From contig JBLDXI010000051.1 in the NCBI GenBank assembly GCA_047495785.1, positions 124,001 through 188,000 on the forward strand: 64,000 nucleotides of DNA, given 5' to 3'. The notes below the pieces were generated by a model, which did no database searches, was not told the DNA's origin, and saw nothing but the letters and a program-made list of their open reading frames with translations. The position numbers were made by a program, and so were the translations under genes. This DNA comes from Lepidodermella squamata (Eukaryota; Animalia; Gastrotricha). Below, piece by piece: positions 30,128-30,353 of the stretch (the first letter of the stretch is position 1; each line of letters begins with the position of its first letter).

Positions 30128-30353
30128 CCACTAGTGTTAGCAAGATTGCTCTTATAGTACGTTGCGTTATATTCAGGCAGAAGGCCAGAGAAGAACTTAT
30201 ATTATTTTGTATAGGAATGACTGATTTAATGAGCGACAGCGCGTATATGGTCAACGCGAAACCAAGCTAATAAGAGAAATAGAGTTGCAAAGTTAGTTAT
30301 TTAATGAGCCAATGTGCGCGTTCTAGTAGCTACACTAGAAAGCGTGTCGACAG
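30128..30353 (-). repeat. 226-bp 5'-terminal module of E2, identical to 61635-61860 of E3
   Basis: CCACTAGTGTTAGCAAG...GCGTGTCGACAG is identical by eye in both; the sequences diverge immediately inward. Confidence 0.93.

What the first reader, a model, noticed from the sequence alone, without database searches (positions are those of the whole stretch)
30128..30353. Two divergent LINE families share an identical 226-bp 5' cassette
Seen: E2 30128-30353 equals E3 61635-61860, abutting the same target base, yet their ORFs and 3' UTRs are highly divergent. By APE motifs and LRLRGG, E3 is closer to E1 than to E2. Inference: a swappable promoter module spread by template switching or by rDNA gene conversion anchored in the identical flank. 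Alternatively it is an independent short element or spacer variant that forms the true landing pad.
Basis: partly seen in the sequence, partly recalled or inferred. Interest (0 to 1): 0.8.

Follow-up and report, generated by a model that had tools for sequence, protein, structure and literature searches.

The report
Shared 5' head on two LINEs
Two very different jumping genes (LINE retrotransposons) sitting at the same spot of the ribosomal DNA spacer carry an identical 226-base piece at their front ends, most likely a portable leader or promoter module recently passed from one family to the other.

Summary
Window 30128-30353 equals 61635-61860 (226/226), and identity stops on the element side at that base. 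The two carriers are E2 (23834-30353) and E3 (56148-61860). Both are antisense APE+RT LINEs in the rDNA intergenic spacer. They share no other detectable DNA, and their proteins are 25-29% identical.

The cassette lies inside the target-site duplication of each element and abuts the same spacer base. It is absent from the three empty spacers in the window.

Two new points:
- The third family, E1, carries a diverged copy of a 37-nt core of the cassette, with a 17-nt exact match, 14 nt from its own 5' end.
- Contigs of another organism's sequencing run bridge the same E2|cassette boundary, with about 4% divergence in the cassette. They also show shorter and variant 5' ends.

So the cassette travels with the elements and is not an assembly artefact, at least for E2.

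My best reading (about 0.5) is a mobile 5' leader, possibly a promoter, exchanged between co-resident LINE families. Whether the exchange was by RNA template switching or by DNA recombination is unresolved. Promoter function is untested, and the proposed initiator at about 30222 does not fit any observed 5' end. The nearest precedents are mouse L1 5'UTR recruitment and the trypanosomatid Pr77 hallmark. The E3|cassette junction has no independent support yet.

The parts
30128..30353 (-). 226-nt 5' cassette of E2. On the element (minus) strand its 5' end is at 30353.
   Evidence: Identical to 61635-61860. Lies inside the E2 target-site duplication.
61635..61860 (-). 226-nt 5' cassette of E3.
30227..30263 (-). 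37-nt conserved core of the cassette (cassette nt 91-127). It contains the 17-mer GCGTTGACCATATACGC.
   Evidence: Aligns with E1 nt 15-46, 30 matches and 2 gaps, reached by 1 of 1000 shuffles. The 17-mer is exact in only 3 places of the window.
61734..61770 (-). The same core in E3.
6831..6862 (-). Diverged copy of the core, 14 nt from the 5' end of E1.
23834..30353 (-). E2, an APE+RT LINE of 6520 bp. ORF1 is 27509-29848. The ORF2 frame is open from about 27500 to 24735. A family-specific 5'UTR of 279 nt (29849-30127) separates the cassette from ORF1.
56148..61860 (-). E3, an APE+RT LINE of 5713 bp. ORF1 is 59239-61365/86 and ORF2 is 56475-59252. Its family-specific 5'UTR is about 269 nt (61366-61634).
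1..6876 (-). E1, a third LINE family whose 3' part is cut off by the window start. Its 5' junction is at normal-spacer base 15336-15339.
23819..23833 (+). Left copy of the E2 target-site duplication TAACCTCAGAAAATT. The right copy is 30354-30368. Alternative parse: a 6-bp duplication TAACCT plus 9 nt of flank carried at the E2 3' end.
56142..56147 (+). Left copy of the E3 target-site duplication TAACCT. The right copy is 61861-61866.
15360..15374 (+). Empty target site in an uninterrupted spacer. The same sequence occurs at 38808 and 47275.

Best explanation
The 226-nt block is the 5'-terminal leader of the retrotransposed unit of both E2 and E3. It sits upstream of each family's own 270-280-nt 5'UTR. 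It is a portable module that recombination has moved between co-resident, otherwise unrelated LINE families targeting the same TAACCT site of the rDNA spacer.

Shown:
- It lies within each element's target-site duplication.
- It is absent from empty spacers.
- It stays attached to E2 at the same boundary in another organism.
- A 37-nt core of it is conserved at the 5' end of a third family, E1.

Inferred:
- The core is kept because it serves a 5'-end function. The most likely one is an internal promoter or transcription-factor site. A cis element for 5' end formation is the alternative.
- The E2/E3 identity comes from one recent illegitimate exchange. I favour a template switch of the reverse transcriptase between two LINE RNAs engaged at the same target. 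DNA-level recombination between rDNA units is nearly as likely.
- The direction of transfer is not established. E2+cassette is the older documented association. E1/E3 kinship argues that the E3 lineage could be the native owner.
For: - 226/226 identity with a sharp left boundary, against 25-29% protein identity and unalignable family-specific UTRs.
- Target-site duplications flank body plus cassette in both elements, and no duplication copy lies between cassette and body.
- Three empty spacers lack the cassette.
- E1 nt 15-46 matches cassette nt 91-127 (30 matches), reached by 1 of 1000 shuffles. The 17-mer is exact in 3 places, against 0.16 expected with up to 3 mismatches.
- In run X1 (organism A) a contig covers 30105-30266. 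It crosses the E2|cassette boundary with 6 listed substitutions in the cassette, while the E2 body is 98-99.9% identical.
- Both copies look intact and so are young.
- There is precedent for recruitment and exchange of 5' ends in LINEs: PMC3600994 and PMC13174262.
Against: - Only one copy of each family is visible.
- The E3|cassette junction has no independent support. The cassette-alone run search listed nothing. Exact and homology look-ups of ORFs spanning the junction found nothing.
- Nothing indicates promoter activity. There is no Inr/DPE pair at +1 by inspection. The TCAGTC motif lies at +132. The spacing between the TATA-like ATATA and the TCATTA motif differs between E1 and the cassette.
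- The RNA fold z-score is +0.65, and only sub-threshold Rfam matches were found (best E 3.3, none of a ribozyme family).
- In organism A the 5'-most 90 nt are variable or missing. The identical long form and junction in two families could therefore reflect identity by descent at the DNA level.
- Relatives of E3 in other organisms (ORF2 up to 68% identical) lack the core where a 5'UTR is available.
Confidence: 0.5

Rival explanations
1. Local DNA-level event. The cassette plus the right junction is identical by descent. One occupied rDNA unit had its LINE body replaced, either by a new insertion at the left target copy with deletion of the resident body, or by unequal or illegitimate recombination between units. 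At least one of the two chimeras is then a one-off structure of the array and not a transposing lineage.
For: - The right junction is at the same base, although the duplications read as 15 and 6 bp.
- Identity is 100% across the part that is hypervariable in organism A.
- The flank is identical for 631 nt.
- rDNA arrays recombine continually (background in PMC2718515).
Against: - No homology exists at the left boundary to guide recombination.
- The same E2|cassette boundary occurs in another organism, so that chimera is at least heritable and old.
- If the 9 nt CAGAAAATT are read as carried flank, both families have the same 6-bp duplication and the coincidence disappears.
- Recombination between R1 subfamilies in Drosophila rDNA was found to be rare (PMC2718515).
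Confidence: 0.25
2. The cassette is an independent short insertion or spacer variant at base 15360. It serves as a landing pad, and E2 and E3 each inserted immediately to its left.
For: - Same right junction and identical sequence in both units.
- In organism A two cassette contigs of different depth appear to merge into one junction contig, that is, different bodies behind one head (the reading is indirect).
Against: - It needs E2 to have inserted with no duplication, exactly at the cassette edge. It also needs E3 to have deleted exactly the 9 bp up to that edge.
- No solo cassette occurs in three empty spacers.
- A related core sits at the 5' end of E1, which joins the spacer at another base.
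- There are no terminal repeats above chance, no tRNA-like part and no Rfam family.
Confidence: 0.15
3. Assembly or polishing artefact. One of the two junctions does not exist in the organism.
For: rDNA arrays are hard to assemble, and the E3|cassette junction has no independent support here.
Against: - An assembler joins at shared sequence, and none exists left of the boundary.
- The E2|cassette junction is seen in an independent run.
- Both elements are otherwise coherent, with open frames and duplications.
Confidence: 0.04

Closest known systems
Recruitment and exchange of 5'UTRs among mouse L1 families (PMC3600994). Also promoter co-option and chimeric 5' ends of L1 (PMC13174262).
   Same: A new 5' block sits upstream of the older family-specific leader. 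The exchange between co-active LINE lineages is modular with a sharp boundary, and a regulatory role is presumed.
   Different: Those cases involve families of one L1 lineage with closely related ORFs. Here the carriers have 25-29% identical proteins and are site-specific elements of one rDNA spacer position. No promoter activity has been shown here, and the tandem-monomer signal is only weak (a 20-nt motif repeated at 75-nt spacing, reached by 17 of 1000 shuffles).
Pr77 hallmark of trypanosomatid retroposons such as L1Tc, NARTc, ingi/RIME and SIDER (PMC5814959).
   Same: A short conserved signature at the 5' end is shared by different retroposon families of one genome. There it is an internal RNA polymerase II promoter.
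   Different: Pr77 starts at +1 and folds as an HDV-like ribozyme. Here the conserved core lies at +15 in E1, +91 in the cassette and +1 in the organism A short form. No ribozyme-like fold or Rfam match was found.
U6-L1 type chimeric retrocopies made by end-to-end template jumping (PMC4476161 was listed but not read; the rest is my own knowledge).
   Same: A foreign 5' segment is fused to a LINE within a single target-site duplication, and it has the same two ends in independent carriers.
   Different: The cassette matches no known small RNA. The LINE parts are full-length, not 5'-truncated. The fusion with E2 is stable across organisms.
R1-type site-specific LINEs of rDNA (PMC2718515).
   Same: APE-type elements with a precise target, a short duplication and a defined 5' junction. 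Several lineages co-exist in one array.
   Different: The target here is in the intergenic spacer and the elements are antisense to rRNA. Clade membership was not tested. Sharing of a 5' block between lineages is not reported in the passages I read.

Membership tests
LINE 5'UTR / internal promoter module | Lies at the extreme 5' end of the element, inside the target-site duplication | tested here: met
LINE 5'UTR / internal promoter module | Drives transcription from the first nucleotide of the element | not testable with these tools
   No usable RNA run of this organism. X2 (RNA?) holds only traces of the E2 UTR at depth 2-3.
LINE 5'UTR / internal promoter module | Core promoter motifs correctly placed relative to +1 (Inr at +1, DPE near +28, as in Drosophila LINEs) | tested here: not met
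   By inspection: no Inr/DPE pair at +1. TCAGTC lies at +132, and an AGTTC lies 2 nt off the DPE register.
Pr77-like shared 5' hallmark | The same 5' signature in distinct retroposon families of one genome | tested here: met
   E2 equals E3 over 226/226. The E1 core gives 30 matches across a 37-nt block.
Pr77-like shared 5' hallmark | HDV-like ribozyme fold at the RNA 5' end | tested here: inconclusive
   No ribozyme family matches even at E<=10, and the fold z-score is +0.65. HDV-like folds can escape both tests.
Template-jump chimera with a cellular RNA (U6-L1 type) | The 5' segment is a copy of a discrete known RNA | tested here: not met
   No Rfam family, no tRNA.
Template-jump chimera with a cellular RNA (U6-L1 type) | A single target-site duplication around the composite | tested here: met
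Independent short mobile element or spacer variant | Occurs alone, with its own duplication | tested here: not met
   None in 3 empty spacers, and no duplication copy between cassette and body. Not tested genome-wide.
Independent short mobile element or spacer variant | Terminal repeats or another structural hallmark | tested here: not met
   Only a 7-8-nt inverted match, not terminal on the right side and at chance level.

The most novel reading that the evidence does not exclude
A portable 5' head, with the 37-nt core as its working part, circulates among at least three deeply divergent site-specific LINE families that compete for one nucleotide position of the rDNA spacer. It acts as a shared regulatory 'public good' that is repeatedly re-dealt between lineages, and in one genome it is kept identical across families.
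Probability: 0.3. Interest if true: 0.7.

Novelty: new variant of a known kind. Interest (0 to 1): 0.5.

Why it matters
LINE families are usually thought to evolve as closed vertical lineages, and this holds most strongly for site-specific rDNA elements. A 5' block that is identical between families with under 30% protein identity would show that regulatory ends can move sideways between unrelated LINEs sharing a niche. The cassette and its conserved core also form a compact candidate for how antisense spacer elements get transcribed. The system is small enough to test directly: one site, three families and one 226-nt module.

Tried and rejected
Searches that returned nothing:
- Cassette-alone search of sequencing runs: none listed.
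- Two metagenome scans, one with the core pattern and one with the spacer next to the target: 0 hits each.
- Exact look-ups of E2 ORF1/ORF2, E3 ORF2 and two ORFs spanning the junctions: not on record.
- Homologue searches with E3 ORF1 and the 53-aa junction ORF, and an exhaustive search with the 93-aa junction ORF: nothing.

Checks that did not help:
- Relatives of E3 ORF2 reach only 68% identity. The one with a full 5'UTR (L003) shows no cassette or core.
- Rfam at E<=10, RNA folding and ARAGORN on the cassette: no ribozyme, tRNA or other small-RNA family, only two sub-threshold chance-level Rfam rows, and no stable fold.
- A spliced-leader sequence recalled from memory for rotifers is absent from the window. 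This is a weak test.
- Solved-structure hits cover only the RT domain, so they do not place the clade.
- A gene-conversion tract cannot be traced, because all right flanks are identical for 631 nt.

Ideas rejected or left weak:
- Tandem monomers: only a 20-nt motif repeats at 75-nt spacing, reached by 17 of 1000 shuffles.
- The cassette as a copy of the Pol I promoter or of other spacer parts: only a 20/22 match to 14752-14773, upstream of the 5S gene.
- Nested insertion with 5' transduction: neither boundary has a TAACCT-like site.
- Splicing as the source of the 91-nt skip in X1: the ends are not canonical on either strand.

Full report
**Setting**

The window is a tandem rDNA array with an 8459-bp unit. 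18S, 5.8S and 28S are on the plus strand, and a 5S gene lies on the minus strand in the spacer.

Aligning an uninterrupted spacer (14320-16472) to the window shows three interrupted spacers.
- E1 occupies 1-6876. The spacer resumes at normal base 15336.
- E2 occupies 23834-30353. The left flank runs to base 15374 and the right flank starts at 15360.
- E3 occupies 56148-61860. The left flank runs to base 15365 and the right flank starts at 15360.

All three encode minus-strand proteins: an ORF1 with CCHC knuckles, and an ORF2 with an APE endonuclease and a reverse transcriptase.

**The observation**

- 30128-30353 and 61635-61860 are identical at 226 of 226 positions. The base to the left differs.
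- To the right, identity continues only because both run into the common spacer.
- E2 and E3 share nothing else at word size 7.
- Their ORF2 proteins are 28.6% identical and their ORF1 proteins 25%.
- Each family has its own leader between cassette and ORF1, 279 nt in E2 and about 269 nt in E3. These do not align with each other, with the cassette or with E1.

**Junctions**

The empty site reads ...GATGATAC|TAACCTCAGAAAATT|TAATATT.
- E2 is flanked by TAACCTCAGAAAATT on both sides, and E3 by TAACCT.
- The cassette ends ...GTCGACAG directly before TAACCT in both.
- No copy of the duplicated target lies between the cassette and either LINE body. The composite, not the body alone, therefore looks like the inserted unit.
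- The E2 duplication can also be read as TAACCT plus 9 nt of flank carried at the E2 3' end. Both families would then cut both strands at the same places, and the shared 5' junction needs no special explanation.
- The three empty spacers in the window lack the cassette.

**New point 1: E1 carries part of the module**

- The 17-mer GCGTTGACCATATACGC occurs exactly three times in the window: in the two cassettes and at 6840-6856 in E1, all on the minus strand. With up to three mismatches allowed, 0.16 matches were expected.
- The wider block, cassette nt 91-127 against E1 nt 15-46, has 30 matches and two small gaps. One of 1000 shuffles reached that score.
- The E1 5' end corresponds roughly to cassette position 77. 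E1 joins the spacer 21-24 bp from the E2/E3 junction.
- A related core thus sits near the 5' end of a third family, in a different junction context.

**New point 2: independent reads**

I laid contigs of four public runs on 24600-30599.
- Run X1 (organism A) holds the E2 body at about 98-99.9% identity. For example, it shows 1 difference in 1585 nt and 16 in 929 nt.
- Listed substitutions at 30136, 30160 and 30167 lie 31, 55 and 62 nt from a contig end. Those at 30210, 30215 and 30235 lie 56, 51 and 31 nt from the other end. One contig of depth 206 therefore covers 30105-30266.
- That contig crosses the E2|cassette boundary with 23 E2-specific bases on one side. This is fewer than the 31 the tool asks for a formal bridge, but they match without any listed difference.
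- The cassette there differs at six listed positions in about 140 nt.
- A second contig (depth 264) shares the right part, with one extra T behind 30204.
- A contig of depth 420 joins 30263 directly to 30355. This is a short form whose 5' end is the first base of the conserved core.
- Loose ends at 30310, 30343 and 30348 show further variants of the 5'-most 40-90 nt that still end in CGACAG before TAACCT.

The E2-cassette association is therefore not an assembly artefact and is not brand new. The 5'-most 90 nt are the variable part.

The cassette-alone search listed no run. This fits the divergence seen in X1.

**What the cassette is not**

- At the gathering score, Rfam finds only rRNA genes in the window. 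At E<=10 the cassette region gives two sub-threshold rows (best E 3.3), which I take as chance.
- ARAGORN finds nothing.
- The RNA folds no better than shuffles, z = +0.65.
- Inverted repeats at its ends are at chance level.
- It is not a copy of another part of the spacer. The best match is 20/22 to 14752-14773, about 80-100 nt upstream of the 5S gene, reached by 0 of 200 shuffles. I treat this as a lead only.

**Promoter reading**

The position supports a 5' regulatory role. The block is at the extreme 5' end, upstream of an older family-specific leader, and has a core conserved across families. Nothing else does.
- By inspection of the sequence, there is no Inr/DPE pair at +1.
A start there would exclude the upstream 131 nt from the RNA.
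- None of the three observed 5' ends lies there: 30353, 30263 in organism A, and the E1 end.
- The distance between the ATATA and the conserved TCATTA differs between E1 and the cassette.

**How two families came to share it**

One illegitimate exchange is enough, and the boundary is simply where it happened.
- An RNA-level template switch is attractive. Both families work at the same target and both copies look intact.
- A DNA-level event in the array is nearly as good. It would explain why even the part that varies in organism A is identical here.
- The flanks cannot decide. All units are identical for 631 nt to the right.
- Gene conversion between already homologous heads would be expected to leave the left end unconverted. 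That is not seen, but 226 nt is short.
- Direction is open. E2+cassette is documented in a second organism, while the E1/E3 kinship and the E1 core argue for the E3 side.

**What is known**

- Mouse L1 has repeatedly recruited and exchanged 5'UTRs between families (PMC3600994).
- L1 forms chimeras and co-opts promoters (PMC13174262).
- Trypanosomatid retroposons share the Pr77 5' hallmark, a promoter and HDV-like ribozyme (PMC5814959).
- In Drosophila rDNA, recombination between R1 subfamilies was rare (PMC2718515).
- Pokey carries spacer-derived repeats (PMC10946416).

The present case is a variant of this theme: identity across families with under 30% protein identity, among site-specific antisense elements of one spacer position.

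**Limits**

- There is one copy per family in view.
- The E3|cassette junction has no independent confirmation. The look-ups and searches were blank.
- Relatives of E3 elsewhere are too distant to help.
- The scan had already noted the guild of LINE families at this site, in this window and on other pieces of this genome. It had not noted the E1 core or the read evidence.

Noticed in passing
window 14701-14727 and 15225-15251: A 27-nt motif (26/27 identical) lies 31 nt upstream of the 5S gene on the minus strand and recurs about 110 nt from the LINE target. It may be a promoter element, so a second small-RNA gene may lie near 15080-15195 on the minus strand. Rfam finds nothing there.
   Followed up: partly
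window 30351-30397: In run X2 (probably RNA, organism B), contigs summing to a depth of about 88,000 match only this roughly 40-nt piece of spacer beside the target and diverge on both sides. The neighbouring bin has depth 36. This could be a conserved island, perhaps at the rRNA promoter or start, or an unrelated abundant RNA.
   Followed up: no
window 23834-23852: The E2 3' end has no poly(A). It ends AGGTTAGGGGGGG on the minus strand, repeating the target's AGGTTA. This allows the alternative parse of a 6-bp duplication plus 9 carried bases.
   Followed up: partly
window 30190-30211 vs 14752-14773: The cassette has a 20/22 match, on the same strand, to the region 80-100 nt upstream of the 5S gene. 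No shuffle of 200 reached it.
   Followed up: partly
window 30985-31003 and 31428: The spacer right of E2 carries a private cluster of changes (3 extra bases and 11 substitutions in 19 nt) and a 1-nt deletion. Neither occurs in the other five units.
   Followed up: no
window 3502-3974, 4315-4707: The long open 5' part of E1 contains tandem repeats (246 nt x 1.9 and 153 nt x 2.6) and a larger duplication visible in the translation. It may be a repetitive leader, not protein.
   Followed up: no
window 50974-55101: This 28S copy is about 400 nt longer than the other four (4128 against 3713-3725 nt), so it holds an insertion.
   Followed up: no
window 29198-29366: Run X1 holds two versions of this part of E2 ORF1, one with 0 and one with 17 differences in 169 nt. 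Organism A therefore has at least two E2 subfamilies.
   Followed up: no
window 3100-3129 and 60937-60966: VLRLRGG, like the ubiquitin tail, occurs upstream of the Gag-like part in both the E1 and E3 ORF1 translations and is absent from the E2 ORF1 translation.
   Followed up: no
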